64,000 bases of DNA from Negaprion brevirostris. Taxonomy: Eukaryota. Location: assembly GCA_030324005.1 (NCBI GenBank), contig JARDVH010000059.1:38031182-38095181 (forward strand), in the 5' to 3' direction. The stretch's first letter is position 1. Each line of letters starts with the position of its first letter. The translations under genes were made by a program, and so were the position numbers. The notes under the pieces were generated by a model. The model searched no databases and was not told the origin of the DNA. It saw nothing but the letters and a program-made list of their open reading frames with translations. Shown here piece after piece: positions 173 to 63,639 of this stretch.

Positions 173-2416
173 TATCTGGCTGACATTCTAGTCAATGGAA
201 GAGAAAAAGTGGACATCTTCAGGATTTGGATGTCACCATTCAGAGATTGGAAGACTATGGACGGAATCCGCTAGGAAGTGTGAGTTCTTTCAGTCCTCCA
301 TTGAGTATTTGGGACATGCGATTGGTGCCATGGGCCTTCACAAATCTCCTTTGAAGATCAAGGTTTTCACAAAGGCACCTGTACCTCAGAATATTAACCA
401 GTTGCGTTCATTCCAAGAATTGTTGACTCACGACAGAAGATTTGTTTCAAATTTTGCAACTATTTTAAAACATTTGCATTACACCTTGTGCCAGAACAAG
501 AAGTGGAAGTGGTCAGAACAATGCAATAATGCTTTCACGCAAGCCAAAAAAATGTCTTTCAAATCTGAAGTTCTTGTGCATTTTGATCCTACCCTAACCC
601 TATAGTTAGCCTGTGATGCATCCCCTTTTGGTGTTGGAGTGATGATATTCCACGTCATGCCATTAGATGAAGAAAAACCCATTGCTTTTGCAACTCAAAC
701 CTTAAGGAAGGCTGAAAGTAATGACACACAAATTGAAAGGGAAGCATTAGGGATTATTCTTGGAGTAAAAAAATTCTATCAATTCCTGTATGGAAGAAAG
801 TTAACACTGGTGACGACCCATCGTCCATTAATTGCCATTTTTGGACTATGCACGGGAATTTTGTCACTGGCAGCAAGTAGAAGGCAGAGATGGGCATTGC
901 TATTGTCCAGACATAATTAAACCATCAAGTATCAACAATCAAGTCTACACTGTAATGTGGATGAACTATCAAGATTACCATTGCCAAGTAGTTTGTCAGC
1001 TAGTAGTTCATCAAACTACTCGGTCACTGCCTGTGTGGTGTTTGCACTTTCTCCCTATGTTTGCATGGGTTTCTCTGGGTGGTCCGGTTTCCTCCTGGAT
1101 CCTGATTGAGAAGATGAGTGTTAGACAGGATACACAACAAGTGACAATGGATCTCAATTTGTCTCCTAAGAATTTGAAAGTTTCTTAAATGAGAATGGCA
1201 GTAAACATATTAGGTCAGGCGGCATGGTGATACAGCGGTTAGCACTGCTGCCTCACAGTGCCAGGGACCTGGGTTTGATTCCTGGCTTGGATCTCTAACT
1301 GTTTGGAGTTTGCACATTCTCCTTGTGTCTGTGTGGGTTNNNNNNNNNNNNNNNNNNNNNNNNNNNNNNNNNNNNNNNNNNNNNNNNNNNNNNNNNNNNN
1401 NNNNNNNNNNNNNNNNNNNNNNNNNNNNNNNNNNNNNNNNNNNNNNNNNNNNNNNNNNNNNNNNNNNNNNNNNNNNNNNNNNNNNNNNNNNNNNNNNNNN
1501 NNNNNNNNNNNNNNNNNNNNNNNNNNNNNNNNNNNNNNNNNNNNNNNNNNNNNNNNNNNNNNNNNNNNNNNNNNNNNNNNNNNNNNNNNNNNNNNNNNNN
1601 NNNNNNNNNNNNNNNNNNNNNNNNNNNNNNNNNNNNNNNNNNNNNNNNNNNNNNNNNNNNNNNNNNNNNNNNNNNNNNNNNNNNNNNNNNNNNNNNNNNN
1701 NNNNNNNNNNNNNNNNNNNNNNNNNNNNNNNNNNNNNNNNNNNNNNNNNNNNNNNNNNNNNNNNNNNNNNNNNNNNNNNNNNNNNNNNNNNNNNNNNNNN
1801 NNNNNNNNNNNNNNNNNNNNNNNNNNNNNNNNNNNNNNNNNNNNNNNNNNNNNNNNNNNNNNNNNNNNNNNNNNNNNNNNNNNNNNNNNNNNNNNNNNNN
1901 NNNNNNNNNNNNNNNNNNNNNNNNNNNNNNNNNNNNNNTGGAAAATAATCACCAAGGCATCCACTATCACCTCCGCCATTGAAAGCAGTATCTCACCTGT
2001 AGACCAAACACAGAGTCAGTCTGTAGTTACAGTGTTGATACCAGTCAAATCAGCCACCAATGATGTTTGTGCAAAGGCAGAAATGCCAGAGGTTACAACC
2101 AGTGCAAAGAAGAAGATCCACAGCTTCACCATTAAACATTCTGAGAGTGACAACCTCAAGACCATTGATTTATAGATTATCGTTTATTGATTAGTGTTCA
2201 TGTTGCACTTGTTTGACTTAGTTATGAAGGTTCAGTTTAAAGGAGGAAGAAATGTTATGCATTAATATTGATTCTTGGTAGCTGCACGAAGCACTGTGTA
2301 TTAATATGATTAATATGTTCATGTCTTTGTCAGAAGTGAATGACGGGTCTCTAGCATGGAAAACTGCCAGTGAAGAAGCAGTCATGTAGTAAACACTACC
2401 CTGTAAATAAACTTCA
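173..2416 (+). mobile_element. Degenerate Ty3/Gypsy LTR retrotransposon (RT/RNase H remnants, PPT and probable 3' LTR), interrupted by SINE pieces and a gap
   Basis: Frameshifted motifs YLADILV, KCEFFQSSIEYLGH, ACDASPFGVG, PIAFA, QIEREALGIILGVKKFYQFLYGR, QRWALLL; purine tract AAAGGAGGAAGAAA (2239-2252) directly followed by TGTTATG; AATAAA near 2405. Confidence 0.85.
1217..1339 (+). mobile_element. HE1-type SINE 5' part, runs into gap
   Basis: GGCGGCATGGTG..GGTTAGCACTGCTGCCTCACAG tRNA-like head with B-box-like GGTTTGATTCC. Confidence 0.8.
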
Positions 2417-13752: not shown

Positions 13753-14340
13753 TTTCCCAAAGGTAAAGGAGTCTAAAACTAGAGGGCATAGGTTTAAGGT
13801 GAGAGGGGGAGAGATACAAAAGGGTCCAGAGGAGCAATTTTTTCACAGAGGGTGGAAAGTGTCTGGAACGAGCTGCCAGAGGCAGTAGTAGAGGCTAGTA
13901 CAATTTTGTCTTTTAAAAAGCATTTAGATAGTTACATGGATAATATGGGTATAGAGGGATATGGGCCAAATGCAGGCAATTGGGATTAGCTTAGGGATTC
14001 AAAAAAAAAAGGCAGCATGGACAAGTTGGGCCAAAGGGCCTGTTTCCATGCTATAAACCTCTGAATCTGCACTGTCCCCACAGGATACTTGCCTTTATCA
14101 ATTGTGGTATAGATTACAAAAGTGAGGAAGTCATGTTGGAGTTGCATAGAACAAAAGACAAGTATCGAAGTTGTACAAGACATTGGCAAGGTCACACTTG
14201 GAATACTGTGTACAGTTCAAGTCATCCTGTTATAGAAAGGATATTATTCAACTAGGAAAAGTGCAGAAAAGATTTACCAGGATGCTACCGGGACTTGATG
14301 GATTGAGTTATAAGGAGAGGCTGGATAGACTGGGACTTTT
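13753..14340 (+). mobile_element. Two CR1 LINE 3' fragments
   Basis: AAAACTAGAGGGCATAGGTTTAAGGTGAGAGG 3' signature; YKTLARSHLEYCVQF..KVQKRFTRMLPGLDGLSYKERLDRLGL. Confidence 0.85.
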
Positions 14341-16822
14341 NNNNNNNNNNNNNNNNNNNNNNNNNNNNNNNNNNNNNNNNNNNNNNNNNNNNNNNNNNNN
14401 NNNNNNNNNNNNNNNNNNNNNNNNNNNNNNNNNNNNNNNNGAAGGGACAGGCTGTCCCAAAAGCTTGCGGCTTTTGCTACAAATAAACCTGTTTGGACTT
14501 TAAACTGGTGTTGTGGGGTTTCTTCCTTGGGAATACCACAGTCAACCATCCTTCTGTCTGAAAACAGAACTATTTACATGAAGTTACTATTTTCTGCCTT
14601 TGAGTCAATCCTTCTTATCCATATTGATCCTCCCAGTCCTTGAACCACAATGTTATGGATGAAATTATCCATTTTGTGGCATGGATTTGCTCATGAATAA
14701 ACAGATGTTCCGGAGGGTGGCGTTGAGTGTTGGTAGCAGCAGTGAGTTGGGTAAGTGGGATGCAAAGAATGTTGGTGGGATTAGCTCCCAGCAGGCACAC
14801 TATGTGTGGGAGGGATTGGAGTTGCTCATCAGAAAGACGCAACAACTGGTTTATCAACAAGCCATTCAGAAAATGCAAGAGAGGCAGAGGGTTAATTTAG
14901 GTTTCTGTAAAGACAAAATAAAAATAATGGGTGGAAGTCTGGAAAAACAGCCAAAATGCACACATGACGAGATATGGGAAGTTTATAATATAACATTTTT
15001 AACGTGTGCGGCAGAAAAATCTTGAAACGTTTCGCAATTAGTGAATTGCTTTTAAAATACAGAGGCTGTTAGTGTTCAGACAAAACCATGGTCATTTTAC
15101 ACACTGACCTCTAAACAGTGGGGTAAAATGATTAAGCTTGTGTTTTTTTTTCCCCTTTAGGATGATATTAGCCAGAAAACAGACTTTCTTCAGTACCATG
15201 TGATTTTTATGTTAACCTCTGTTTGCTAACATTTTCTCCAAAGGTCAGCACCTTTTCAACAATGCAGCATTCCCTCTATACTGCATTAGACAGGCAATTT
15301 AAATCAAATTTGCTCTTCTGGTTTAAGATTCAAACCATAACCTTCTGATTCAAAAGTGAATTTACTTCAGTTTGGTTTATTTGGTAGTACATAAAAATAG
15401 GAGATCCGTTTATAATACTTAAAACAGTAGCATCATTCATGGCTGTTTTGATATCTGGAATTTGGATTTTGTTGTGAATGTTTTTCATGAGTGCCTTACT
15501 TTTTTTAAAACAATATAATTGTGTACATATTATACTGTGATGCATTTTAAATATTTGTAAAATCCAGTTTTGCTGCTTTCCTCCCAAAAATTATTCTTAA
15601 GCATGTTTTTGAAGCTCAGTCAGTATTGTAACATTTCTGCTCATTCACTATTTACATGTCATGGTCTATAATTATTACCAGGATGCAATTATCATGGATT
15701 GTATCTATTGAGATGTCAGCAGATGGCAATATCGTGACGTCTCTAACTCTGAATTCAGTATTCTGACTGGTACCCTTTATAGATTGGGCTTTGAAATTAA
15801 TCTTTCACAATCTGCTCCCAGTATTGGTGAAATTTTACATAATAATCGGATATGTTATTAAACAATTGCCTATCTTGCAGATTCATAAAATATACTAGGG
15901 TATTTGAATTAAAATCATGGACTTTCTTGATAGAGGGGGTCTGACTATTTTCATAAGCTGTTGTGTGGGTTTCATGATTTCAGGCTTTCGAGCTGTTTTT
16001 GTTGCCAAAAGATCTGTCTTTCAACTTGTGTTGCAATTTATTTTTTTAACATGGCTTTGACAAATTCTTAAAAAGTTGCTGTTGATTTGGTGGAAGCTGA
16101 TTACAACAGACTATTTAAACTTATTGAACGGCGTACAACCAAGCATGATAGAGGAAGTGAAGTTCCTTGATTGACATCAGAACTAGCATGGGGAATGCAA
16201 ACAACACTAAAAGCTCCGCAGCAGGATTACTGGGGCCCTGTCAGGGATCAGTATACAGACTGTGGAATACTTGTGCCCTCGTGCACACTGTTTTTTAACA
16301 TCAACAATAATTCTTTGTTCATGGTTTGATATAAATTTTCCTATTTCAAACATAAAAGTCAAGACTAAGTTTTTGTCTTTGAGATTAAAGGTGCAGTTTT
16401 TAGCAGCTGCACTATCTGGCATAAAGATCAGGCTGTGATATGTAGGTTAGTGTGTAACACAGCAAAATGATAGCTTTAGAACACCTGCACCTTTGCACTG
16501 TGATTCTCGTGCTAATGCTTTCAAAACCAGAAAAACAGATCAGATAACAAAACAGTCCAGCATTTGATTGGTCTCAGCATCAGGGGGCTTGCACAGTCTC
16601 ATTTTAGTCTGGAGCCTTAAGTAGGTCAGGCCTAGCTTAGCCAGCCTGCAGATGATCAGCTGCAGATGATCTCTGGATGAAGTCAAGCTGAAAGGAATTT
16701 CAGTGAACCCCTCCTGATAGGCGTAGGCCTAAAAAAGGCTGGCCTAGTTAAGCTTCAGCTTATAGTGTGAGGGAAGGCTTTACAGTCAGTCTGAAGTTTG
16801 TATGATGTGCTCTGCACAAAAT

Positions 16823-17205
16823 ATGCTAGGTAAAAAATCAAATCGATCCTCGAATTTTACCATTTATGAAAAGATTGATCTGTTAAAACTTGTGCGGCCT
16901 CACATCAAGGTCTTGGAGGTTCATAAGAATAATCAAGCCATAATTGTTGAAAAGAATCGTTGCTGGGAAACTATAGCACAGCAGTACAATGCTGTTGGAG
17001 TGGATCGCCCTCCTCGTGGTGCACAGGCTTTGCGAACACTATACAAACGCATTAAAGAAAGTGCCAAACAGGAGATAGCCAGAAGAGAACAACTGCATCC
17101 AGACTATAAAGGAAATGTCTCTGAGCCAACCAGAAGAATTCTAGAAATGATTCCTCACATTTTCCAACCACTTTTGAAGGTGATAGACCCTGACAACTTG
17201 CAAAG
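16823..17205 (+). CDS. FSBP: FSBP coding exon 1, Myb/SANT-like DNA-binding domain; in-frame upstream ATG at 16802; phase-2 donor AG|GTAAGG
   Basis: RSSNFTIYEKIDLLKLVRPH..IVEKNRCWE..YNAVGVDRPPR.AQ.LRTLYKRIKE..SEPTRRILEMIP closely matches recalled human FSBP; nested in RAD54B as in human. Confidence 0.93.
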
Positions 17206-24191: not shown

Positions 24192-24771
24192 GCCTTGTGG
24201 AAGTTCACCTTCTGAACAAGAACAAGATTCCTGCGTGGAACAGCCTGCTAGCTTGTACCCACAGCCTGGAACCTCAGGCTACCAGTCCCATTCCAGTCAT
24301 GATTGGGTAACGCCAGAGTCAGAACCCGAACATGAAGAGAAACCTCCTCCGATATTAACTGTGCTATCACAGCCGAGCGAAAACTTGCAAGAACAGAATA
24401 AAACAGAGACCCAACAGGCCACTAATGGCTCTGTCTCACCCTTTTCATCTTCTGGGGCAAGAGTATCCTTAACACCATCTCCGAGGCCTGCAAGAAGGGA
24501 AGATGTTTTGTTCAGCCACCACCAGCACCACAGCGGTGCCCTGCACCATGTTGGCAGTCATGATAATGGAGAAATGAAATTAATGTCAGCAGAGGAACAT
24601 GAGATAATTATGGAAAATCAAAGAAAGTTTGGACTCTATCTTGACGAAAAAAGAGAGAGCCTGAAACGAAAGCAAGCTTTAGAGGAAGACTTGTTAAGGG
24701 CAAAAATCAGAGTAGAAGAATTAAAGGCAGCAAGACTGCAACAAGGCTTGCCAGCAACCCAGGAAGCCTAA
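24192..24771 (+). CDS. FSBP: FSBP terminal coding exon (Pro/Ser-rich linker plus coiled coil); spliced CDS from 16823 is 320 aa
   Basis: Acceptor CTTTCCTTCAG|G in phase 2, compatible with the 17205 donor (AG|G = Arg); EEHEIIMENQRKFGLYLDEKRESLKRKQALEEDLLRAKIRVEELKAARL matches the recalled FSBP C-terminus. Confidence 0.92.
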
Positions 24772-27604: not shown

Positions 27605-29217
27605 TAATTTGATTTGATTTTGTTATTGTCGCATGTATTAGTATACAGAGAAAGTTGATAAAGAAGGGTAGGAGAAACTACGAAGCTGGGCTAGCGCTTA
27701 ATATAAAAAAGGATAGCAAGAGTTTTTANNNNNNNNNNNNNNNNNNNNNNNNNNNNNNNNNNNNNNNNNNNNNNNNNNNNNNNNNNNNNNNNNNNNNNNN
27801 NNNNNNNNNNNNNNNNNNNNNNNNNNNNGAATGGCGGGGCAGGCTCGAAGGGCTAGATGGCCTACTCCTGCTCCTATTTCTTATGTTCTTATGTTCTTCT
27901 GTATCTATTGTTTTTTGAATGCTATACTGTTCATAGAGAATGAAAGGATAGAGTGCAGAGTATAGTATTACAGTCTTCTCTAGGGTGTAGAGAAAAATCA
28001 ACTTGATATGAGGTAACTCCATTCAAACGTTTGATGGCAGCATCAAAGAAAGGTTTTGAGTTGGTTGGTATTTTGTATCTTATTCCTGATGGAAAAAGGC
28101 GGAAGAAAGTACGTCCGGGTGTGTGAGGTCCTTGGTTACGCTGGCTCCTTCTCTGAGGCAGCGGGTAGTGTAGGCAGAGCCAATGGATGGGAGGCTGGTT
28201 TGTGTGTTGGACTGGGCTTCATTCATGACCCTTTATAGTTTCTTGCGGTCTTGGGCAGAGCAAGAGCCATATCAAGCTGTGAAACAACCAGAAGTAATTC
28301 TTTCTAGATGCATCTGTAAAAGTTAGTGAGAGTCGTAGCGGACATGCCACGTTTCCTTAACCTCCTGAGAAAGTAGCAGCGTTGGTGGGCTTTTTTAACT
28401 ATACCATCGGTGTGAAGGGATCAGGACAAATTGTTGGTGACCTGCAGACCTAGAAACTTGAACCTTTCCACCATTTCAATTTTGTGCCTGTTCATGTAGA
28501 CAGGGGCATGTCCTGCACTACGCTTCCTGAAGTCGCTGAGTATCTCCTTCATTTTGTTGAAATTGAAGGGGAGATTATTGTCGTTGCACCAATTCACCAG
28601 ATTCTCCACCTGTTTTTGCTGTGCTCTATCTCATCATTGTTCAAGATCTGACCCCCTATGGTGGTGTCATCAGCAAACTTGAAAATTGAGTTGGAGGGAA
28701 ATTTGGCCATACAATTGTAGGTGTATGAGGAGTCTAGTAAGGAACCGACGACACAGCCTTGTCGGGCACCGGCGTTGAGGATGATCGTGGAGGAGGTGTT
28801 GGTGCCTATCCTTACTACTTACGGTCTGTGGGTTAGGAAGTCTAAGTGCAGTCGCAGAGAAGGGAATCAAACCCAGGCCACGGAGTTTGGAGATGAGTTT
28901 TGTTGGAATAATGGTGTTTGAAGGCTGAGCTGTAGTCAATAAATGGAAGTGTGACGACGGTGTTCTTGTTATCCAGATGTCCCCAGGTTGAGTCCAGAGC
29001 CAGGGAGATGGTGTCTGCTGTGGATCTGTTGTGGCAGTAGGTGAAGTATAGTGGATCCAGGCAATCTGGGAGGCTGGAATGATTCAAGCGCTTCATAATG
29101 ATGGATGTCAGAGCCACCAGACAATAATCATTAAGGCACGCTGCCAGGCTTTTCTTTGGCATAGGGATGATGGTCATCTTCTTGAATCAGAGAGGGATAT
29201 TAGATTGGTGGAAAGAG
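27605..29217 (-). mobile_element. Rex1/Babar-type LINE (RT to 3' end) with a young CR1 inserted at about 27655-27895
   Basis: IIPMPKK..CLNDY..VALTSIIMK..LDPL.F.Y..NRSTAD.ISLAL..HLDNKNT..FIDYSSAF; TIIPTKLISKL; WCNDNNL..N.NK.KE..DFRK; (TTTGA)n tail near 27608. Confidence 0.85.
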
Positions 29218-29919: not shown

Positions 29920-31410
29920 CTGGTAAATCAGTTTTTAGACTCTTTCAGAATTGTCTTGTCTGGAGCCACAAGAAAGGGTTTGACAAATTTTGTTCAAATT
30001 TTTGGAGGATGTTAGAAATAGGACTGATAAAGGGGGTCAGTGGATGTAGTTTACTTGGATTTACAGAAGGCATTTGATAACATTCCCTATGGGAGTTTGG
30101 TTCATAAATGCTGGCATGGATTAAGGATTGTTTAGCAGGCATAATGCAAATAGTAGGAAGTAACAGGTCATTCTCGCACTGGCAGGCTGTGATCGGTATT
30201 GTACGTCAACTTGGGCCCCAGCTGTTTACAATATTTATCAATGATTTGGATGTGGGGACTAAATGTAATATTTCCAAATTTGTGGATGACACAAATCTAA
30301 GTGGGAATGTGAGTTGTGAGGAAGATTTGGGCAGACTTGGGCAAGAAAATGCAAATGAATGTAATGTGGAAAACTGGGAGATTATCCACTTTGGGAAGCA
30401 CAGAGATGCAGATTATTTTTTAAATGATGACAGATTAGAAAGTGTACATGTACAAAGCAATCTGGGTATCCTCATCATTACGTCAGTGAAAGCTAATGTG
30501 CAGATGCAGCAGGCAGTTAGGAAGACTCATGGCGTGTTAGCCTTTAGTGCAAGAGGATTTGAGCGCAGAAGGAGCGAAATCCTGCTTCAGTTGTAATGAA
30601 CCTTGGTTAGACTGCACTTGGAATGGTGTAGAGTTTTGATCCTCTCACTTTAGGCAGGATATTATTGTTATAGAGGGAGTGCAACAAAGATTCATTCGAC
30701 TTATTTCCACCATGGCGGGCCTGTCCTATGAAGAAAGATTAGGGCAACTGGCCTGTGTTTTCTAGAATTTTGAAGAATGAGTGGTGATCTGAGTGGAACC
30801 TACAAAGTATTCCAGAGATAGACAGGGTAGATGGAGGTAAGATGTTTCCTCTAGTTGGGGAGTTTAGAACGAGAGAACACAATTTGAAAATAAGGAGGTC
30901 ACTTAGGGCTGAGAAGGGAGAAACTCCTTTTACTTAATTTACTTAAATTAAGGGGTGGTAATTATAGGACGGATGTCAGAGGTATGCTCTTTATTCAGAG
31001 GGCAGTGAGGGTGTGGAATGCCCTGCCTGCAGCAGTTGTGGACTTGCCAACTTTAAGGGCATTCAAATGGTCAGTGGGTAGGCATATGGATAACATTGGA
31101 ATAGTTTAGGTTAGAGGGTCATTAGGTTGGTACCACTGGTCAGCGCAACATCGAGGCCGAAGGGCCTGTACTGCGCTGTAATGTTCTATGTACTTAGAAG
31201 GTTGTGAATCTGAGGAATTCTCTATCCCAAAGGACTGTGGAAGCTCTGTCATTGGTATTTAGAAATTTGTCAATCTCTGCTTTAAACATACCCCATAAAG
31301 GGCTATGTGGACAGTTTGGGTAAAAAGCACTGGAGTGATGATCAGCCATGACCATAATTAATGGCAGAGCATGCTCGATGGGCTGAATGGCCTATTGTCC
31401 TCTGTTTCTA
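29920..31410 (+). mobile_element. CR1 LINE (RT to 3' end) with a nested CR1 tail at about 30950-31190
   Basis: LAWIKDCL..LGPQLFTIFINDLDVGTKCNISKFVDDTNL..IIHFG..YFLN. Confidence 0.85.
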
Positions 31411-42600: not shown

Positions 42601-43222
42601 CAGAGGTCAGTGCCATTTGTATAGAAAACACGTGATCGCAGGGTTTGATGTGCAAGAGAGAAGTGACAAAACTCTTTAAAATTGATCTTGTTTTGCAACA
42701 TGTTTGGTAGTAGCCAAGAGTTAACAATGAGTTTTAAAAGTAGGAAAGGGATACTGCAGTTTAAGTGTATAGATTATTTCAGCATATAAACTTTCAAAAT
42801 TTGTTCTGTAGCTACACACATTTCAGAGCAGCTAAGTTTATAGGAAATAAGTTTATACTTAGTTGCAGATGTTTAGAATAATGGCCATTGACAGCTTGCC
42901 ATTATACACTTAACAGCTTCAATGGATTAGCTGGGCGTTTCTTACACAGTCATTGAGGGATTAGTCTGACCTTCCTTGACCCCTGGTTTAGCATTATGCA
43001 AGACTCAGGGTTTTATACTACACAATAGAGACATTCAGCACCTCATTACTCTGAATATTCAAGCTGAATGGGCCCTTTTGCACATCATTACCTAAGAAAG
43101 CAGGTTTTGGGTGTGTTTCTGAAGTGGGGGCTGGCCTTTGGAGGTAGTCTGATTTAAAAGAGCAAGTCAGGGCTCTAGATTATTCAGTGTAAAGTTTAGT
43201 TGCTGAACAGTTCAGTTACACC

Positions 43223-43911
43223 ATGGAATCCACAAGAAAAAAACAGAAGGAACTTACCTTATCTGAGAAGATTCAAGTTCTCGAATTGCTTCAGAGGCAA
43301 AAGATCTCCCAGATGGAACTGGCAAAGCGTTTTGGTGTTACACAGCCTGTCATCTCCAGGCTAATCAAGAACAAGGAAAAAGTCTTGATGGAGTGGCACA
43401 ATAACAGCAATCCAGATCGTAAACGTAAAAGGGAAGGAAGGGATAGTGATGTGGATACAGCCCTCTTACAGTGGTTCCAGATTGCCAGAGCACAACATGT
43501 ACTTGTCTCAGATGAAGTCTTGGCTGCAAAGGCCAAAGGCCTGGCGGATGCTATGCAGATCAGGAATTTTGTTCCAACTGTTGGCTGGATCAACAGGTGG
43601 AAGGCTCGGCACGGTGCCTTTTTGCAACAAGTACATGGGGAAACTGATGGCAGAGGTCAGTCATTGGGCAGTACATCACAAGAGGTTGTGCCACCAGAAG
43701 GAATGACTGAAGAGGAATTTCATCAGTATGTGGAGCAAGCTGCTATTAAGGTATGTGTTTGGGACATGACTGATCAGGAACCAGGAAACACCATAAAAGC
43801 AATTACAAAGTCAGAAGCTATTGACGTTGAGGAAGAGAAAATGATGCCGGCCTTTAAGATGGCAAGAGGAAGTAACGGCCAACTAACACCTTCATCGAAC
43901 CAGTATAACAT
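43223..43911 (+). CDS. Exon 1 of a predicted chimeric gene: pogo/Tigger (CENP-B/TIGD-type) HTH_psq-like plus Tc5-type HTH domains, no DDE domain
   Basis: Intact 230-codon ORF with strong Kozak ACCATGG; LTLSEKIQVLELL..SQMELAKRFGVTQPVISRLIKNKEK, RKRKR, VDTALLQWF..R, LAAKAKGLA, F.PTVGWINRWKARHG; donor AT|GTAAGT (phase 2). Confidence 0.85.
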
Positions 43912-45250
43912 GTAAGTTTACCACTTTTCAATTTTTATTGACTACTTTTTAAATAATTTACTAGAAATTTAAGGAAAAGGTTATTCTGACTCTGCTAAAT
44001 TCTAGTTTTTTTTGTTCTCCTTGGTTAAACAGTTCACCATCTCTCTTCTGTACTGCTGATATTTATGTTTAAAGATGCTGTGTAGCAGCTTGGCTCAATT
44101 GGTTGCTGTAAGAACATTGTAGATTCAAGGACTATTTTAGATTTGAACATCTTAACCTGAATTGACACTCAATGCAGTACCCTCACTGTATTGCATGGTT
44201 GAAGATGCCATCTTCTGAACAAGCCAGTACATCAAGGCGTGTGTGTCTTCTCAAATAGATATTAGAGATCTAATGGCATTATTGTAAGAGTCTGGAAACT
44301 CTCCGCGGGGGGGGGGGGGGGGGGGGCGGGNNNNNNNNNNNNNNNNNNNNNNNNNNNNNNNNNNNNNNNNNNNNNNNNNNNNNNNNNNNNNNNNNNNNNN
44401 NNNNNNNNNNNNNNNNNNNNNNNNNNNNNNNNNNNNNNNNNNNNNNNNNNNNNNNNNNNNNNNNNNNNNNNNNNNNNNNNNNNNNNNNNNNNNNNNNNNN
44501 NNNNNNNNNNNNNNNNNNNNNNNNNNNNNNNNNNNNNNNNNNNNNNNNNNNNNNNNNNNNNNNNNNNNNNNNNNNNNNNNNNNNNNNNNNNNNNNNNNNN
44601 NNNNNNNNNNNNNNNNNNNNNNNNNNNNNNNNNNNNNNNNNNNNNNNNNNNNNNNNNNNNNNNNNNNNNNNNNNNNNNNNNNNNNNNNNNNNNNNNNNNN
44701 NNNNNNNNNNNNNNNNNNNNNNNNNNNNNNNNNNNNNNNNNNNNNNNNNNNNNNNNNNNNNNNNNNNNNNNNNNNNNNNNNNNNNNNNNNNNNNNNNNNN
44801 NNNNNNNNTGCCTGGAGTACTGGTCCCCAGTGTGCTGCCAGATACAGACATCCTGCCTCCTAAACTGGCCCTCCTCTGCCTCTGAGGACTTGAAGGTTGA
44901 CTGGAAAATTCCTGTCTGCCTGCTGCATGCAGATGAGTACTCCTGCTGGACCTTTATCCCTACTCTGCAAAAATGGCCCAGAGGTGGGATGTAATTGGGG
45001 AACTGGCCAGTGGGGCTATTTTTAACTCCAGCCTTCCTCCGATTCCTCTGAGCCTTCCTCAGCTCTGGCAGAAGGTGAAAATCCAATCCCAATAGTTGAA
45101 CCCTGAATTGTTCTTTCTCTTGGTTCAAGGGCACTAATGCCAGTTATAATATCACATGCATAAGAAATGCTACAAGCATGAGTTAAATTGACTAATTCTG
45201 ATAAGAAGAATGTTGGCCAAGCTACTAGGTGAACTCCATTACATCAAGTA

Positions 45251-45402
45251 CATTAACAAGCCTCACAACACCAGATTAAACAGGTTTATTTGGTAGCACA
45301 AGCTTTTGGAGCACTGCCCCTTCATTAGGTGAATACCAAATAAACTTGGACTTTAACCTGATGTTGTAAGAGTACTGCGCCTACCCCAGTCCATATCATG
45401 GC
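45251..45402. mobile_element. Palindromic Penelope-type short insertion with 12-bp target-site duplication
   Basis: CTCACAACACCAGATTAAA..TTTAACCTGATGTTGTAAG; TTACATCAAGTA at 45239-45250 and 45403-45414. Confidence 0.7.
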
Positions 45403-46878
45403 TTACATCAAGTAGTGCAACACCCAAGGAAACAAGGCCTCAGTACCCCACTTAAAGGATGGCACTGAACAACAATGGATTACAACATTTACAACTCTCT
45501 CGTTGCTGCATTGGACTGTTAGCAAGTGTCGTGCACTTAAGTCAGGAAGACAAATGAACACAATCGTCTACATCAGAGACAAGAGTGTGTTCTGTACTTT
45601 CCTGTTCTAAAATTTGGCCTCAATTATTTCTCATTCCCATCTCTCCTGAAGATGTAATAGTGTTGCTCAGGACTCTTTCCATGGGTGTCAGTCACCCTTG
45701 GTTATGTTTCCCAAGTGAGCCTTAACTGCAAATATTTGTTGGCTTCTTGACCACTGTTACAATCTCCATAGAAACAGATAACTTTTAAAGAGAAGTTTGA
45801 ACTTCCAGTTGATTTGAAGTCAAGGTTTCACAATTTAAAAAATACTTTTTACCAAATGCTTTTGTAAACAATTCATTCTTCAAATTCCAGAAAAGAGATT
45901 CCCCATTTTTAACTTTTAGCATAACTAACGATCTCATTCTATGGCTATGCAGTATCCCCAGACTGGTCTAAAATTATTCTCAGCTCTTGATGACTGGGTT
46001 GCTTCCTTTTTACTTTCCCAAACAAGTAATTTCCAATCACAGAACTGACTTTAACTGTGAAGGTTGCGCTGGAGATTCTTTCATNNNNNNNNNNAAATCC
46101 TTACAAATTCAATCTCTTCAATCTGAAGCACATGTTTCCACCTGCATTCAGCATGGTGAACCTTAGAGTCAGCATTTTTTCTGTATCATGTGCAGGACTC
46201 ACTGCTGACATGTGATATTCATGGATTTGTTGAGAAGCCTGTAGCCTGATCTCAAAAATGGCTTCCTCTGTCCTCTTCCCCATTGGTAACATGAAACATA
46301 ACTTTGTATGTAGATAGAAATGCTAATTAGCTATCTTTTAATCAACTTTTTTTCATCTTACAAATAAATGAATGGTTAGTTTACAGCACAACTGCTTACA
46401 TCCAATATCTTTTGGGACTTTGGGAGATTCAGAGTCTACTCATGCTACACTCCGACTACTGCCATTGTCTCTAAGCAGAAATATCTTGTACCACCTCCTC
46501 AGTAAAACCATCCTAGCTATACTTTATAAACTTCAGAATGGTAACACCACAAAGTCGAATCCAATTTGCTCATGCATAGACTTGCACTTCTAACAGAGGT
46601 CATCATTTGATGATCAGGAGTGTGAGTCCCTGTGCTTATTTTCCCTCCAGTCATTGAAGTTAGTTGTAGACCTTAGCTAAATGAATTCAGCCAAAATTGG
46701 GGAATTGAACCTCCCTGTACTGTATGACTCCGTTAATTGCTGCTAAAATGTTATTGTCATCAGGAAAACCATTTTGTCCACCAATAATCAAAAACATATG
46801 TATTTTTGGAACACAATTTATTTGCAATAAATTATTGAGAAATTGTGGAACTAATATATTTATTCAACTTTTATACAG

Positions 46879-47434
46879 ACCACATGGAAGAAATTCTGCT
46901 TCAAGAAAGGATATTTGCATGGAAATGCCTAGCAGTTCTTATTCACAGCCTGGAACTTCAGGCTACCAGTCCTATTCATTCCCCAGGTGGGTAAGCCCAG
47001 AGGTAGGACGAAAGCGAAGTGAAGGAAAGTCTCTGTTAACTGCTCAGCCACAGCTGAGGAACAGCTTTGAGGGACTGGACAAGGCAGAGACTCATCTTCT
47101 TACAGATGTGTCTTTTTCTCCACCTTGTGCTAGATTACCCTCCACATCATCCCCTAGACCTCTTACAAGGGATGACCTTTTATTTCTGCAGCAGCACCAG
47201 GCAAGCATCCCACGCTATGGGACCAGGAATGAGAATGACATGCCAGCAACATCCTCAGAGGAACAAGAGCTTATCCTGGAAAACCAAAGAAAATTTGGAT
47301 TGTATCTTGATGAGAAAAGGGAAAGCCTTAAAAGATTACATGCGCTGGAGGAAGAACTGCTCAGGGCAAAAATCGAAGTTGAACAGTTAAAAGCATTACG
47401 ACTACGAGAATTGTCAGTGCTTAAGGACCCCTAA
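46879..47434 (+). CDS. Exon 2 of the predicted chimeric gene: duplicated FSBP-like terminal exon; spliced product 414 aa
   Basis: Acceptor CTTTTATACAG|A in phase 2 at the position homologous to the FSBP acceptor; shares QPGTSGYQS, SPRP..R.D.LF and ENQRKFGLYLDEKRESLKR..ALEE.LLRAKI.VE.LKA.RL with 24192-24771; no stops or frameshifts. Confidence 0.87.
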
Positions 47435-48642
47435 ATGTAGAATTTTCGATGTTTGCCAACTCAGCTCAGTTTTTGATCTGTACTGTGATTTTTTCACAGC
47501 ATGAAATGAGCACTGTTGACACAAGAAATGAATTTCTGTGGGATTCTCCCATTTTAACTGTGATGAAAGAACCATGGATACCTCCCAAGAAAGCTGACCA
47601 CCATTTGTAGATGGATGTATGATGGCAACATTTAACTTAAGACTAGGAACTGGTCTCTGGTGATTGTTCAGTGGATAAATACAGCATGGTATATAAGATT
47701 GGGTCAAACAGATTGAATATTTGGTTTGATCTTGACATTGAGTTAATTGATGTAAATTTGGAAAGCAATGGGGCCAATTGGCCTTGGGCTAAGAAGAGGA
47801 AAAATTGACTACCGTCCCCTTTCATGATCACCATTATGGTTACTCTGCTAGAAACTATTTCAGTGAACATTAAATGCCTAATATTCTAAATGTTCCATTC
47901 TAACTCTTAGAAACAAAGTGCAGAACTGTGATAAAATATGGTTCATTGGCTGGTGTCTAGAAAATGACACCATTCTATGATATTTGTGATAACGCTATCT
48001 AATTTTTTGATGCAATTAGTCCCACTGCCTGCTTTGTCAGTCCAATCCATACATTCATAATCATCTTGTGTAAAGTAGCAATTTGTCCAATTTGAATAAC
48101 ATCTGCCACTTGTCAGCCCCGACTTTCTAAACTGACTACGTGAGGAGGATTTTTGATCTTTCTGTTGTTTGAAGTTCGTTCCAGTTTGCCATCAAATTGT
48201 TTTTGTTAACCCAGTAGTTAACCCTATAATTTAAACAAAATAATGTCTGTGTTTAGGTTGCACTGGAAGGAATTTTACAGGGATGTGTTTAAACATTGGA
48301 TAACAAAAGAAACTTAACTGCCACCCAAGTACAAGAACAGCTCAGCAATTATATTTTTATGGTTGAATAGCCTGCTGTAAGTCATTATTCTAGTCTCATA
48401 ATGTGAAGAATGACAAAATGGCCACAAGCTTCCTTTNNNNNNNNNNNNNNNNNNNNNNNNNNNNNNNNNNNNNNNNNNNNNNNNNNNNNNNNNNNNNNNN
48501 NNNNNNNNNNNNNNNNNNNNNNNNNNNNNNNNNNNNNNNNNNNNNNNNNNNNNNNNNNNNNNNNNNNNNNNNNNNNNNNNNNNNNNNNNNNNNNNNNNNN
48601 NNNNNNNNNNNNNNNNNNNNNNNNNNNNNNNNNNNNNNNNNN

Positions 48643-50914
48643 CAGCCTAGTGAACCTCCTCTGCACTCCCTCCAAGGTCAAAATATCCTTGCGCAAGTGC
48701 GGCGACCAAAACTGCACACCGTACTCCAGCTGCGGCCTCATAATGTGATACGAAATAGCAAAGGAAAGAAGTCACTGGAACAATTTATATCCTCCTCCTC
48801 TAACAGAAGCTGCGTAATAAGACAGAGTATACATCATAAAATAATCTGGGCTTGCAAGGAAGATATTTCAAAAATTGTGGGACTTTAATCTTCACATTGA
48901 TTGGTCAAATCAAATTGGCCATGATAGCTTGGAGGGTGAGTTCATAAATTGTATTTGGGATTGTTCCTTAGAACAAGACATTTTGGAACTTACCAGGGGC
49001 TATTCTAGTTTGGACCTGGAATTGTGTGAAGCAGGATTAATTAAGAGCCTCATAGTAAAGGATCCTCTGTGCAAGAGTGATCATAACAATATGGGATTTC
49101 TCATTCAACTTGAGAGTCAGAAATTTGGCTCCATAACTTGTGTCTTAAGTATTACTAAAGGCAATTATACAGATAAGGAGATAGAGTTAGCTAGAATGGA
49201 CTGGGTAACTAGATTAAAAGGGCAAATGATAGAGAAGCAGTGCAGATATTTATGTAGATATTTCATAGCTCACAACAAAGATATATTCCATTCAAGAAGA
49301 GAGAATTTTTGGAAGGATGCACCATTCATGGCTAAGTAACTTAAGGGCAGTATCAAACTCGTAGAGCAGATGATTGGGAAAAATTTAGAAACCAGCAAAG
49401 GATGATGAAGAAGATTAGAAGAGGGAGAATTGAAGTCAGAGAGAAAACTAACGAGAAGTATAAAAACATACAAACATAGGAAATAGGATGGCTATAGATA
49501 GGTTGAGTGAGTGGTCAAAAATCTGGCAGATGGAGTACAATGTGGGGAAATATGAAATTGTTAACTTTGGCAGGAGGAATAAAAAGGCAGAATATTACTT
49601 AGGAAATGGCTGCAGAATTCCAAAGTGCAGAGGAAGCTGGTATCCTTGACGATGAGTCATAAAAAGTTAATATACAGGTACCACAAATCATTAAGACTGC
49701 TAATGGAATACTATCCTTTATTATGAGAGGAATTAAACCTAAAGATAAATCTGTTATGCTTCAGTTACACAGGGCATTGATAAGACCACATCTTGAATAT
49801 TATTCAGAGAAAGTTTACCAGATTGATACCTTGAATAAACAGGTTATCATATGAGGGAAAATTGGACAGATTGTTTCAGGTTCATTTCCACTGGAGCTTA
49901 GGAATTGAGAGGGTGACTGAAGCATACAAGCAACCTCTAATGTGACACTTTATAAGAACGTTTGCTGTGACGGGATGATAAATTAGTATAGGTAGATGAC
50001 TTGCTAACTAACAGGAAACAGAGGTTCTAAATAAATGGGTCTTTTTCATTGGGAACTTATAACTAGTGGAATACCGCAGGGATCAGTGCTCAATTTTTCA
50101 GGATCTTGTTAATGATTTGATTGTAGTCAAATTTGCTAATGATATGAAAATGGATAGGAAAGCAAATTATGAGGATTATAGAGAGTCTGCATAGAGATAT
50201 AGATAGGTTAAGTGAATGGGCAAAAACTTAGCAGATAGAATATAATATGGGCAAATGTGAGCTTGTTCACTTTGGCAGGAAGAATAGAAAGGCAGTGTAT
50301 TATTTAAATGGAAAGAGATTGCAAAATGCTGCAGTACAGAGGGACCTTAGTGTCCTTTAGTCAAATCAAAAAGTCAGCATGTAGGTACAGGAAGAAATTG
50401 AGAAGGCAGATGGAATTTTGGCCATAGGGTGGAATGGAGTTTTAATGTCAGGAAGTCTTGTTACAACTGTACATCGGTGGGATGATCACACCTGGAACTA
50501 CCTTTTTTGGTCATATTTGGATCAGAGGCAGTTCAGAAAAAGTTAACTAGACCAATTCCTGGGATGAAGGGCTTGTATTGTGTGATAAAAGGTTGGGCAT
50601 ATACTCATTGGAGTTTAGAAGAAGGAGGCGATCTTACTGAAAGATATCGGTTTCTGAGGGGACCTGACAGGTTAGATGCTATGAGGACATTTTCCCTCAA
50701 GGTGTAATATAGAACTTGGGGCACAGATTTTTTTTTAAAAAATCTCCCATTTAAGATGAACATAAGAACATAAGAAATAGGAGCAGGGGTAGGCCATCTA
50801 GCCCTTCGAGCCTGCCATTGCCATTCAATAAGATCATGAAGTGGATCAGTTCCACTTTCCCGTTTTCTCCCCATAACCCTTAATTCCCTTGTCTATCAAA
50901 AACCTATCTACCCG
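48643..50914. mobile_element. Cluster of CR1 LINE fragments (- 48643-48745; + about 48770-50760; - young tail 50755-50914)
   Basis: [32 protein letters not shown]; DFNLHIDW..LEQ.ILE.TRG..LDL..SDHN endonuclease motifs; GGAATACCGCAGGGATCAGTGCT. Confidence 0.8.
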
Positions 50915-61615: not shown

Positions 61616-63175
61616 ACATGGGGAAAGAGGTGGGGAGGCACGAGAGGCAATGAAAAAGCAAAGTTGTACAGTGATAGAAAAAAAAGTAAGGGGTCTGGGC
61701 AAAGTAGACTGTTGACCAGGACTGGCTGTTTCTGATTGCTAATTTACACAAGTTGGCGTATCAGAGTATTCACATTCGAAGGGTGACATGTAGTTGGAGA
61801 TATGATAGTTAAAAGACAAAGTATTTGAGAGGCGCTATTTTAAAAAAAAAGCAAGTATGTATGCAACAAACAAAAAAGCGAAAGAGATTTGTTGAGTGGG
61901 AGACTAGCAGCAAAGTAAAAGATTTTTTGATTGTGAAGAACACTGCATAACAATTAGTTTGCAAAAGAGAATAATGCTCTTTAATAATATAAAGTTGTTT
62001 TGCTCCTGGTTCCATCTCCTAGTCAGATTCATGAGGTATTAGAGGACACCAAATTTTCCAGCCCAGCAAATATGTTGGCTCAATTAAATGCAGGATTTTA
62101 GTTTGCTATTTCCACTGACTTTCGTTGTACAAAGGATTCAATGCAATTACAGTATCTCAAATCTCAATTCTAGAGGCAGATAATGTTATATACAATGCAC
62201 ATGTATGGATCTTCCATATAACGTATAGTGAAAAGTTGATGTTGCAGATTACAGGTATTTCAGCTTTCACTGAGGTAAATCTGAGAGAAATCAGACGTGA
62301 TAAGTGCACAATCATAATTTTCACAAAAAGGTATTTTGTTAGATTTTTATTAATCACATAGGCAGGACTAATTCTAGATTAGGTTATCATTAAGGGGATG
62401 AGTTACTTTGCTGTTTTCACTTTACTATGTCCAGGCCCTCTTTTCATATTTTCTTTTACAGTTGTCTTCTCCCCTCTCCTCAAAGCACCAATTCTTCCTG
62501 GAGTACAGCTTTCCATTACCACCTCCAAACAACTATTCCTAATTTGTGGACTGTGATGGAGAATATTGGCCAGTTATTCAACAGGAAAAGGGAGGTGAAG
62601 TCCCTGTAACTGAATTTGATCCTGTCCTCTCCCAAAGTCCATACACCTTCACGTTTCATAGTAAGTTAATTGATAATGAATAAGATGGAAAATTGACTGG
62701 ATTTTTTCCTTCCCTGGTCAAGACAATTTGGAACAGAAGAACGTGAGGGAAAGTTTTTTCTTTGGTTCATATAATGCTGTACATTTTCCAATTTCTTTAA
62801 AATTTGCTTTCACATCTTTTAGGACCGCTGACATCATGCATCATTCCCTGGATGATGGGATGGGAAAGCAATTCATTCTGCTGTTACTTCCACTGTGAGT
62901 GGGTGTGCAGCAGATGTAGGGCTAGTTGTTAGGGTTGAGGTCTGCCTGGATACTGCTCTCAATTTTCCCTTTGCACAACAACATTGAGACCTTGGTTGTG
63001 AATAGTTTTGGGTCAGAACTTGTATTTGATATGTGCACGATGCTCCCTGAAAGGACAGAAGTTCGCAGTCAGTGATTATTATGTGCTCCAGGGCCTGAGG
63101 TGACATTTCTGATTTGAATGCATTTGCTCATCTCAAATACAGTCTGTCATCTAGCTACATTATGCTTCCTTGCAG

Positions 63176-63445
63176 GTGCCTTTTCTCTGCAGCAGCTGCA
63201 GCCATCCCGACAATTTGTAGCACCAAAACAAATTCACAAGCCACTGCCGCTAGTATCTCGGCAGCAGATAAGTCCAGAACATCACAAAGACCAAAACGTA
63301 GCCGATTCTATCACTAAGTACTACAACGTCTTGTGGTGTAAAGCATCAAAGAAGAAACACAAGAAATGGGAGGGGGATGCAATCTTGATTGTCAGAAAGA
63401 CATCTGTGATTCTCAAGGATGTAGAGGGCAAAGATATTGGAAAAG
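63176..63445 (+). CDS. RAD54B: RAD54B internal coding exon (N-terminal region); alternative acceptor gives a start at 63193
   Basis: DSITKYYNVLWCKASKKKHKKWEGDAILIVRKTSVILKDVEGKDIGKG matches recalled RAD54B (DSLVKYFSVVWCKPSKKKHKKWEGDAVLIVKGKSFILKNLEGKDIGRG); acceptor CTTCCTTGCAG|G, donor AAG|GTAAGC phase 1. Confidence 0.9.
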
Positions 63446-63639
63446 GTAAGCACAGTTATATTATTGTTAAAGTTTATTTTTCACTTTTTTAATTCAGTAT
63501 TTTTAATTTCACTGTTTAATTCAGGATGTCATACTGATAAACTCTTCCAAAAAAAAATCATATTTCCCCAAATTAGAAAACTGTAAAAATCCAGTTAAAT
63601 AACACCACAATAAAGAATATTGCAAATGATAAAATGGTT

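What the first reader, a model, noticed from the sequence alone, without database searches (positions are those of the whole stretch)
43223..47434. Candidate new chimeric transcription factor: Tigger/CENP-B DNA-binding exon fused to a duplicated FSBP coiled-coil exon, nested in RAD54B
Seen: an intact 689-nt exon with Kozak ACCATGG encoding two pogo/Tigger-type HTH domains and a basic RKRKR motif, ending at AT|GTAAGT (phase 2). About 3 kb downstream is an intact 556-nt exon paralogous to FSBP exon 2, with a phase-2 acceptor at the homologous position. The join (AT|A = Ile) gives a 1245-nt CDS, 414 aa. Established: FSBP normally pairs this C-terminus with a Myb/SANT-like domain, and TIGD/JRK/CENP-B proteins normally keep a DDE-like domain in a single coding exon. 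Inference: FSBP duplicated in tandem and its DNA-binding exon was replaced by a captured transposase domain. I know of no described gene with this architecture, but could not search for one.
Basis: partly seen in the sequence, partly recalled or inferred. Interest (0 to 1): 0.92.

Follow-up and report, generated by a model that had tools for sequence, protein, structure and literature searches.

The report
Shark TIGD3-like/FSBP-tail fusion gene
This is a real two-exon gene of sharks and rays that joins a transposase-derived DNA-binding head, stripped of its cutting domain, to a copy of the FSBP tail; gene-prediction pipelines have already modelled it, but we found no study of it.

Summary
[quoted passage not shown] Exon 2 (46879-47434) is a 46%-identical paralogue of the FSBP C-terminal exon that lies at 24192-24771. 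Both N gaps sit inside the intron.

The splice is real. Assembled contigs from two related organisms skip exactly the 2967-nt intron, and a third runs from exon 1 into a diverged exon-2 start. Unique intron sequence is not covered in these runs.

The gene is not new to databases. NCBI models of 377-414 aa exist in six sharks and two rays, named "uncharacterized protein", "FSBP-like" or "TIGD6-like". My literature searches found no paper on it.

The head is not a fresh Tigger capture. Its sister group is the chondrichthyan TIGD3-like gene, and about 229 residues covering the whole DDE_1 domain are cleanly missing in frame. The tail groups with elasmobranch FSBP.

The DNA-binding head and a confidently predicted 57-residue C-terminal helix are the most conserved parts. 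The likely function is a sequence-specific DNA-binding factor that uses an FSBP-type helix to pair or recruit partners.

It is a new member of a known kind, the host-transposase fusion genes. Nesting inside RAD54B was not verified.

The parts
43220..43226 (+). Start context ACCATGG. An in-frame TAA lies 11 codons upstream, at 43190-43192.
   Evidence: The orthologues begin with the same residues.
43223..43911 (+). Coding exon 1: 689 nt, residues 1-229 plus two bases of codon 230.
   Evidence: It is 94-95% identical to residues 1-229 of the Scyliorhinus models and 81-82% to the ray models.
43235..43390 (+). CENP-B_N helix-turn-helix, residues 5-56.
   Evidence: Pfam E 9.6e-9. PDB 1HLV, the CENP-B DNA-binding domain, matches residues 7-130 at E 1.1e-10.
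43418..43432 (+). Basic RKRKR motif (residues 66-70) between the two HTH domains. A nuclear-localisation role is inferred, not tested.
   Evidence: The motif is kept in P0013 and in the TIGD3-like proteins.
43445..43615 (+). HTH_Tnp_Tc5 helix-turn-helix, residues 75-131.
   Evidence: Pfam E 4.4e-12.
43666..43679 (+). Deletion scar. Window residues 148/149 correspond to residues 145/375 of the sawshark TIGD3-like protein P0015, so the whole DDE_1 domain (P0015 188-361) is missing in frame.
43679..43867 (+). Segment homologous to the C-terminal region of chondrichthyan TIGD3-like proteins (P0015 residues 379-445).
   Evidence: tblastn E 2e-5 to 4e-6 with P0015, P0185 and P0187. blastp E 5e-7. 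Alignment.
43912..46878 (+). Intron, GT..AG, phase 2. It holds N gaps at 44331-44808 and 46085-46094 and repeats at about 45279-45334 and 46211-46283. The donor GTAAGT overlaps an in-frame TAA (43913-43915).
   Evidence: The joint skips 2967 nt in X2 and X6.
46879..47434 (+). Coding exon 2: 556 nt, residues 230-414 plus the TAA stop. It is a paralogue of FSBP exon 2.
47255..47431 (+). Conserved C-terminal helix, the last 59 residues. It is 41/59 identical to the window's FSBP and 88-98% identical among the fusion orthologues.
   Evidence: The AlphaFold2 model of orthologue P0013 has a helix at 356-412 with pLDDT 92-97.
16802..17205 (+). FSBP proper, coding exon 1 (Myb_DNA-bind_5). This is the upstream tandem neighbour.
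   Evidence: Pfam E 6.8e-19. Donor.
24192..24771 (+). FSBP proper, coding exon 2. This is the parental-type copy of the fusion's tail.

Best explanation
This is a functional two-exon nuclear gene of elasmobranchs. It lies in tandem about 18.5 kb downstream of FSBP on the same strand.

Exon 1 derives from a copy of the chondrichthyan TIGD3-like (pogo-type) gene. It keeps the bipartite CENP-B-type DNA-binding head, a basic motif and part of the C-terminal region. The entire DDE_1 nuclease core has been lost through a clean in-frame deletion.

A phase-2 donor at the end of exon 1 splices to a duplicated FSBP exon 2, using the same phase-2 acceptor position as FSBP. The tail supplies a long disordered region and a roughly 57-residue amphipathic helix.

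Shown: the exon structure, the splice in relatives, the orthologues in sharks and rays, the origin of both halves, and the pattern of conservation.

Inferred: the protein binds specific DNA through the two HTH domains, as CENP-B does. It cannot cut DNA. It uses the FSBP-type helix to self-associate, to pair with FSBP, or to recruit whatever FSBP recruits. On this reading it is a transcription or chromatin factor with a swapped DNA-binding head.
For: Splice. In one search, 4 runs were laid. Contigs in 2 of them (X2 record 8, 1335 nt; X6 record 23, 1347 nt) skip 2967 nt, exactly the predicted intron. A third run (X1) ends at 43910 and continues with letters that read in frame as a diverged exon-2 start. 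The fourth (X5) has only 199 nt inside exon 1. Unique intron bins have zero depth in these runs, which serves as an internal silent-stretch control.

Orthologues. NCBI models of 414 aa exist in Chiloscyllium plagiosum, C. punctatum, Scyliorhinus canicula, S. torazame and Stegostoma tigrinum. Heterodontus francisci has a 384-aa model, Amblyraja radiata 413 aa and Hemitrygon akajei 377 aa. Window exon 1 aligns to their residues 1-229/230 and exon 2 to residues 231-414.

Constraint. Identity to the orthologues is 88-100% in the DNA-binding domain and 88-98% in the C-terminal helix. It is 72-86% in the linker and 64-88% in the disordered part. All 7 listed nucleotide differences inside the DNA-binding domain are synonymous.

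Origin of the head. In the 1.84-billion-protein search, the best single-stretch hits after the orthologue that I looked up are named TIGD3 or TIGD3-like. The fusion clade has 100/100 support and is sister to four chondrichthyan TIGD3-like proteins at 97/97. The DDE deletion is mapped. H. francisci has both the full-length TIGD3-like gene (P0185, on another contig) and the fusion.

Origin of the tail. The fusion tails form a clade (100/99) that groups with elasmobranch FSBP (100/100) and apart from bony-vertebrate FSBP.

Fold. PDB 1HLV matches at E 1.1e-10 by sequence and is the top Foldseek hit at E 3.6e-5, probability 1.00. In the AlphaFold2 model of P0013 the HTH domains have pLDDT 85-91, residues 137-353 are mostly disordered (pLDDT largely below 50), and helix 356-412 has pLDDT 92-97.
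Against: The runs are only guessed to be RNA, and none comes from the window's own species. Expression in this animal is therefore inferred.

Only 40 of 156 differences were listed. Outside the DNA-binding domain about half of the listed ones change the residue: 8 of 10 in the rest of exon 1 and 12 of 22 in exon 2. None of the listed differences falls in the C-terminal helix.

DNA binding, nuclear localisation and dimerisation are untested. The tail matches no Pfam family, and I found no paper on what the FSBP tail does. The structure model is low-confidence overall (mean pLDDT 57.8, pTM 0.24, 20-row alignment).

The link between the chondrichthyan TIGD3-like genes and tetrapod TIGD3 is unresolved in my tree, which shows an open fork there. 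Sisterhood to all four TIGD3-like rows could be distorted by the long fusion stem (0.66 changes per column).
Confidence: 0.8

Rival explanations
1. The protein works mainly as a partner or antagonist of FSBP rather than as an autonomous transcription factor. The shared C-terminal helix would let it heterodimerise with FSBP, or compete for FSBP's partners. That would retarget or titrate FSBP activity.
For: The helix is the part most alike between the two tandem paralogues. It is 41/59 identical, against 49/124 for the rest of the exon. It is as conserved as the DNA-binding domain among orthologues. The two genes lie within 47 kb of each other on one contig in the window. In Heterodontus both proteins report the same longest-contig length of 47,149 bp, which I take to be one scaffold.
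Against: There are no interaction data, and a monomer model cannot show pairing. The strong constraint on the DNA-binding domain says DNA binding itself matters, so this rival partly overlaps the main reading.
Confidence: 0.25
2. The spliced transcript is real but is a tolerated by-product with no selected protein function.
For: No functional data exist. The databases call it uncharacterised. The middle of the protein evolves fairly freely.
Against: Intact frames of 377-414 aa are kept in six sharks and two rays. The DNA-binding domain is 136/136 identical to S. canicula and 120/136 identical to a skate. All 7 listed changes in the DNA-binding domain are synonymous.
Confidence: 0.04
3. These are two unrelated relics, a decayed Tigger copy and an FSBP pseudo-exon, that only look joinable.
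For: None beyond the prior that such ORFs can occur in introns. No RNA from the window's own species was seen.
Against: Contigs of three related organisms join the two parts at the predicted place. Eight annotated orthologues are colinear across the junction. Both frames are intact.
Confidence: 0.01

Closest known systems
Chondrichthyan TIGD3-like genes (P0015 Pristiophorus, P0185 Heterodontus, P0186 Heptranchias, P0187 Callorhinchus) and vertebrate TIGD3
   Same: [quoted passage not shown] Identity is 54-57% over the head. They are the sister clade in the tree.
   Different: The TIGD3-like proteins are 485-498 aa and carry DDE_1. Here the DDE core is deleted, the last roughly 45 residues are replaced, and the frame continues by splicing into an FSBP-type exon.
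FSBP (fibrinogen silencer-binding protein)
   Same: The C-terminal exon is homologous along its whole length. The intron position and phase are the same, the genes are tandem neighbours, and the terminal helix is nearly the same.
   Different: FSBP's head is a Myb_DNA-bind_5 domain. The fusion has no Myb domain and carries a pogo-type head instead.
Host-transposase fusion genes (Cosby et al. preprint 10.1101/2020.05.07.082677; passages read)
   Same: A transposase-derived DNA-binding domain is joined by splicing to host-derived sequence. The catalytic part is lost and the gene is conserved as a host gene.
   Different: That survey covered tetrapod RefSeq only, and it needed a recognised host domain. 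This gene is elasmobranch, its host part has no Pfam family, the transposase-derived part is N-terminal and supplies the start codon, and its nearest relative is an already conserved host gene rather than a recent transposon.
CENP-B DNA-binding domain (PDB 1HLV)
   Same: The fold is the same bipartite HTH, by sequence (E 1.1e-10) and by structure search (top hit).
   Different: Identity is only 27%. The fusion has no CENP-B dimerisation domain, and nothing indicates that it binds the CENP-B box.

Membership tests
pogo/Tigger-derived TIGD genes | N-terminal CENP-B_N plus HTH_Tnp_Tc5 DNA-binding domains | tested here: met
   Pfam scores are above the gathering cut-offs. The same domains are found in orthologues P0013 and P0171.
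pogo/Tigger-derived TIGD genes | DDE_1 transposase-core domain | tested here: not met
   There is no DDE_1 in the exon-1 product, P0013 or P0171. tblastn with four TIGD3 or TIGD3-like proteins finds no DDE remnant anywhere in the window.
pogo/Tigger-derived TIGD genes | Whole protein encoded in one coding exon (recalled as typical, not checked here) | tested here: not met
   There are two coding exons joined across a 2967-nt intron.
FSBP | N-terminal Myb_DNA-bind_5 (Myb/SANT-like) domain | tested here: not met
   The domain is absent from the fusion. It is present in the window's FSBP exon 1.
FSBP | FSBP-type C-terminal exon with the conserved terminal helix | tested here: met
   Identity is 46% over 216 columns. 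The alignment is colinear. The tail groups with elasmobranch FSBP at 100/100.
Host-transposase fusion genes | Transposase-derived domain fused in frame to host sequence by splicing | tested here: met
   Joint in contigs of X2 and X6, and a loose end in X1. Annotated orthologues are colinear across the junction.
Host-transposase fusion genes | Evolves under purifying selection as a host gene | tested here: inconclusive
   Intact orthologues exist in sharks and rays, with the two end domains most conserved. All 7 listed changes in the DNA-binding domain are synonymous. No formal dN/dS was possible.
Gene nested in RAD54B | RAD54B exons on both sides, on the same strand | tested here: inconclusive
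   The only signals are weak ZGRF1-like_N matches on the ORF at 63118-63492: Pfam E 0.016, below the cut-off, and an Atlas score of 0.85. No upstream RAD54B exon was looked for with a RAD54B protein, because none was in hand.

The most novel reading that the evidence does not exclude
FSBP and this gene may form a tandem pair of 'same tail, different head' factors. Their nearly identical C-terminal helices would let them heterodimerise. In elasmobranchs a Myb/SANT head and a CENP-B-type head would then be brought together on DNA, or would compete for one effector. On this reading the fusion arose by second-hand domestication: a copy of an already host-kept TIGD3-like gene lost its DDE core and was exon-shuffled onto FSBP more than a shark-ray divergence ago.
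Probability: 0.25. Interest if true: 0.7.

Novelty: new member of a known kind. Interest (0 to 1): 0.5.

Why it matters
It adds an old, well-conserved host-transposase fusion from cartilaginous fishes. The systematic survey whose text I read did not cover that lineage.

Both parents can still be read from the gene. The head comes from the chondrichthyan TIGD3-like lineage with a clean deletion of the nuclease core. The tail comes from the neighbouring FSBP.

It gives a natural head-swap experiment for asking what the unstudied FSBP tail does. It also shows that automatic names ("uncharacterized", "FSBP-like", "TIGD6-like") hide one and the same gene family.

Tried and rejected
**Second Myb exon.** tblastn of the window's FSBP exon 1 against the whole window found only itself. 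About 1.1 kb of N lies between the two genes.

**DDE remnant.** I looked in the intron and elsewhere in the window and found none.

**Tail families.** Pfam gave nothing for the tail. A PDB sequence search gave only a chance-level MarR-like hit at E 0.013.

**RAD54B nesting.** Pfam on the ORF at 63118-63492 gave nothing at E 0.01 and a sub-threshold ZGRF1-like_N match at E 0.016. The Atlas score was 0.85, which is only a lead. This point is left unverified.

**Other carriers of the architecture.** Of the 150 listed representatives that match exon 1, 1 of 150 (P0013) also matches exon 2. A further 3436 hits with E up to 0.001 were not listed or examined. No chimaera or bony-vertebrate orthologue appeared. 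Because that search is word-based, absence there is not shown.

**A possible match of the exon-1 end to the TIGD3-like C-terminus.** The resemblance is a few residues present in only some species (print-out), so I rejected it as chance.

**Literature.** Searches found no paper on this fusion. For Cosby et al. (preprint) and Gao et al. (PMC7386202) I read only the passages returned by 'find'. Their supplementary tables, which list the fusion genes and taxa, were not seen and could bear on the 'not in print' claim.

**Joined model.** The joined 414-aa model of the window was never built, searched or folded. The exons were handled separately throughout.
Full report
**What is in the sequence**

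The window carries an open frame at 43223-43915 (230 aa) that starts in ACCATGG. An in-frame TAA lies 11 codons upstream. The frame ends at AT|GTAAGT, and the donor itself contains the in-frame stop TAA.

Pfam places CENP-B_N at residues 5-56 (E 9.6e-9) and HTH_Tnp_Tc5 at residues 75-131 (E 4.4e-12). Both score above their gathering cut-offs. RKRKR sits between them.

After the acceptor tatacAG|A at 46878/46879 the frame stays open to TAA at 47432-47434. The counts 689 + 556 = 1245 nt and 414 aa are correct.

Exon 2 has no Pfam family. It matches the window's own FSBP exon 2 (24192-24771) at 46% identity over 216 columns, E 1.5e-46. FSBP proper has a Myb_DNA-bind_5 first exon at 16802-17205. 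Its intron is also phase 2 and sits at the homologous residue.

**The assembly gaps**

Both flagged gaps (44331-44808 and 46085-46094) lie inside the intron 43912-46878, so no codon depends on them. Annotated orthologues pass from residue 229/230 to residue 231 with nothing in between. Contigs of relatives bridge the two exons. The gaps therefore hide no coding exon, and only the intron's true length is uncertain.

**Is it spliced?**

The look-up of sequencing runs listed no run on record as RNA. It listed small runs guessed to be RNA from related organisms that hold 7-18% of the sampled words.

I laid four of these on 43100-47600 at 80% likeness.
- X2 (record 8, 1335 nt) and X6 (record 23, 1347 nt) each have one contig that covers exon 1, skips 2967 nt and continues in exon 2.
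- The tool placed the joint at 43907/46875 with three ambiguous letters. The GT-AG placement needs a fourth.
- That fits relatives carrying a different last exon-1 base. X1 shows C there, and the NCBI models have Thr or Ile at the junction codon.
- X1's contig ends at 43910. Its loose letters read in frame as a diverged exon-2 start.
- X5 gave only 199 nt inside exon 1, so it says nothing either way.
- Unique intron bins have zero depth in these runs, and only two repeats inside the intron are covered. The intron thus serves as the silent control.

I take these contigs for spliced mRNA. That remains an inference, because the library type is a guess and none of the runs is from the window's species.

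**Is it known?**

It is known as a gene model but not as a described gene.
- The exhaustive search of 1.84 billion representatives with exon 1 gave one outstanding hit, P0013. It is 414 aa, 91% identical, with E 2.9e-134.
- Its 90% cluster holds NCBI "uncharacterized protein" models from Chiloscyllium plagiosum, C. punctatum, Scyliorhinus canicula and S. torazame (all 414 aa). It also holds Heterodontus francisci (384 aa).
- A second Heterodontus isoform is named "TIGD6-like".
- A search with P0013 added Stegostoma tigrinum (414 aa, named "FSBP-like"), the skate Amblyraja radiata (413 aa, 78%) and the stingray Hemitrygon akajei (377 aa, 71%).
- Window exon 1 aligns to residues 1-229/230 and exon 2 to residues 231-414 of these proteins. 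Identity is 94-95% and 90-91% with Scyliorhinus, and 81-82% and 72-73% with the rays.

The window is therefore from a shark. Among annotated species it is closest to the catsharks.

My paper searches found nothing on this gene. The passages I read of the host-transposase-fusion survey say it covered tetrapod RefSeq only. The pogo domestication paper returned no match for sharks, Chondrichthyes or FSBP. I could not see the supplements of either paper.

**Where the head comes from**

After the orthologue cluster, the single-stretch hits I looked up (P0015, P0025, P0027, P0028, P0031) are named TIGD3 or TIGD3-like, and P0034 carries no name.

In a quick tree of 146 head sequences, the fusion clade (support 99) sits with the sawshark TIGD3-like protein (support 96). 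Both lie inside a 15-row group made only of fusion rows, TIGD3-named rows and the unnamed P0034.

Full-length chondrichthyan TIGD3-like proteins exist in Pristiophorus, Heterodontus, Heptranchias and the chimaera Callorhinchus. They are 485-498 aa and carry DDE_1. Heterodontus has both this gene, on another contig, and the fusion. The fusion is therefore a paralogue and not a relocated TIGD3-like gene.

A careful tree of 24 rows over 215 columns gives the fusion clade 100/100 and the four TIGD3-like rows 99/99. The two together have 97/97. The fusion stem is long (0.66), so its exact branching relative to the chimaera split is not safe. The tie to tetrapod TIGD3 is an open fork.

An alignment that allows long internal gaps shows two blocks. 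Window residues 1-148 match P0015 1-145, and residues 149-230 match P0015 from residue 375 onwards. The DNA-level hits abut each other at 43235-43675 and 43679-43867.

The missing block, P0015 146-374, contains all of DDE_1 (188-361). No DDE remnant is found elsewhere in the window.

So exon 1 is a TIGD3-like coding sequence with the nuclease core cleanly removed. It is not simply the first part of a Tigger element.

**Where the tail comes from**

The tail aligns colinearly with FSBP exon 2 from sharks, rays, teleosts and tetrapods. In a 21-row tree the eight fusion tails form a clade (100/99). That clade groups with the seven elasmobranch FSBP tails (100/100) and apart from six bony-vertebrate FSBP tails.

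The duplication is thus on the cartilaginous-fish side and older than the shark-ray split, because both lineages have both genes.

Several points stay unresolved:
- whether a whole FSBP copy was duplicated, or only its second exon;
- whether the TIGD3-like copy first served as an alternative first exon of FSBP;
- whether chimaeras have the fusion, since no chimaera FSBP or fusion was in my sets.

**Constraint**

Against five full-length orthologues, identity is 88-100% in the head (residues 1-136) and 88-98% in the last 59 residues. It is 72-86% in the linker and 64-88% in the rest of exon 2.

Of the 40 differences listed (116 more were not shown), 39 lie in the coding sequence.
- All 7 inside the DNA-binding head are synonymous.
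- In the rest of exon 1, 2 are synonymous and 8 are not.
- In exon 2, 10 are synonymous and 12 are not.
- None of the listed ones falls in the terminal helix.

This fits selection on the two ends with a freer middle. It is not a formal dN/dS test.

**How it probably works**

The head matches the CENP-B DNA-binding domain crystallised on DNA (1HLV). The sequence match is E 1.1e-10. It is also the top Foldseek hit, at E 3.6e-5 with probability 1.00.

The AlphaFold2 model of orthologue P0013 has these features (20-row alignment, mean pLDDT 57.8, pTM 0.24):
- two helical HTH modules at 13-62 and 73-135, with pLDDT 85-91;
- a largely disordered stretch at 137-353;
- one long helix at 356-412, with pLDDT 92-97.

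That helix is 41/59 identical to the window's FSBP helix, against 49/124 for the rest of the exon.

I therefore read the protein as a sequence-specific DNA binder that cannot cut DNA. Its FSBP-type helix would mediate self-association, pairing with FSBP, or recruitment of FSBP's partners. Binding, nuclear import through the basic motif, and pairing are all inferences.

If the intron is retained, the frame stops one codon after exon 1. That would give a head-only protein. I have no evidence for such a product beyond an old ab initio model (P0168).

**Comparison and verdict**

The gene works like a host-transposase fusion and meets that definition: a spliced in-frame join that is conserved as a host gene. 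It fails membership of the TIGD family proper, because it has no DDE_1 and is not single-exon. It also fails membership of FSBP proper, because it has no Myb domain.

The claim of an unannotated architecture is not, and the "captured transposase" story is refined to reuse of the TIGD3-like lineage with a DDE deletion.

Nesting in RAD54B rests only on sub-threshold signals at 63118-63492.

I rate it a new member of a known kind, of moderate interest. The joined model of the window itself was not searched or folded. The natural orthologue P0013 stood in for it.

Noticed in passing
window 46985-46990: There is an internal in-frame AG|G acceptor at 46986/46987, within the sequence ccccAG|GTGGGTAAG. 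It coincides with the point where the Hemitrygon model P0172 starts its exon-2 match (exon-2 residue 37). It is also the point where Heterodontus isoform P0010 leaves the exon. It is probably an alternative splice site that removes the first 36 tail residues.
   Followed up: partly
window 43912-43915: The donor GTAAGT contains an in-frame TAA. An unspliced transcript would therefore encode a 230-aa head-only protein. An old ab initio Scyliorhinus torazame model (P0168, 232 aa) looks like that.
   Followed up: no
window 45279-45334 and 46211-46283: Two short intron stretches are covered by many contigs at high summed depth in the laid runs (up to about 2700 in X5 at the first stretch). They are abundant transcribed repeats, not part of the gene.
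   Followed up: no
window 63118-63492 (+): An ORF shows weak ZGRF1-like_N signals: Pfam E 0.016, below the cut-off, and an Atlas score of 0.85.
   Followed up: partly
window 44306-44330: A long G run directly abuts the 478-N gap. It is a likely cause of the assembly break.
   Followed up: no
window 195-605, 14171-14503, 28842-29177 (-), 30108-30596, 48385-48741 (-), 48875-49339: These ORFs look by eye like fragments of retrotransposon reverse transcriptase or endonuclease. They were not tested against any library.
   Followed up: no
proteins P0193, P0195, P0196, P0203, P0214, P0216, P0217: Squamate 'TIGD3-like' proteins of 640-700 aa carry a C2H2 zinc-finger Pfam hit (PF00096) as well as DDE_1. 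They may be other fusions built on the same transposase lineage.
   Followed up: no
protein P0001 (Heterodontus 'FSBP-like', 255 aa): This model lacks the Myb domain and has an unrelated N-terminus. The cause is probably that its 47-kb scaffold lacks FSBP exon 1. The scaffold is the same length as the one reported for the fusion gene, so the two are probably within 47 kb of each other there too.
   Followed up: partly
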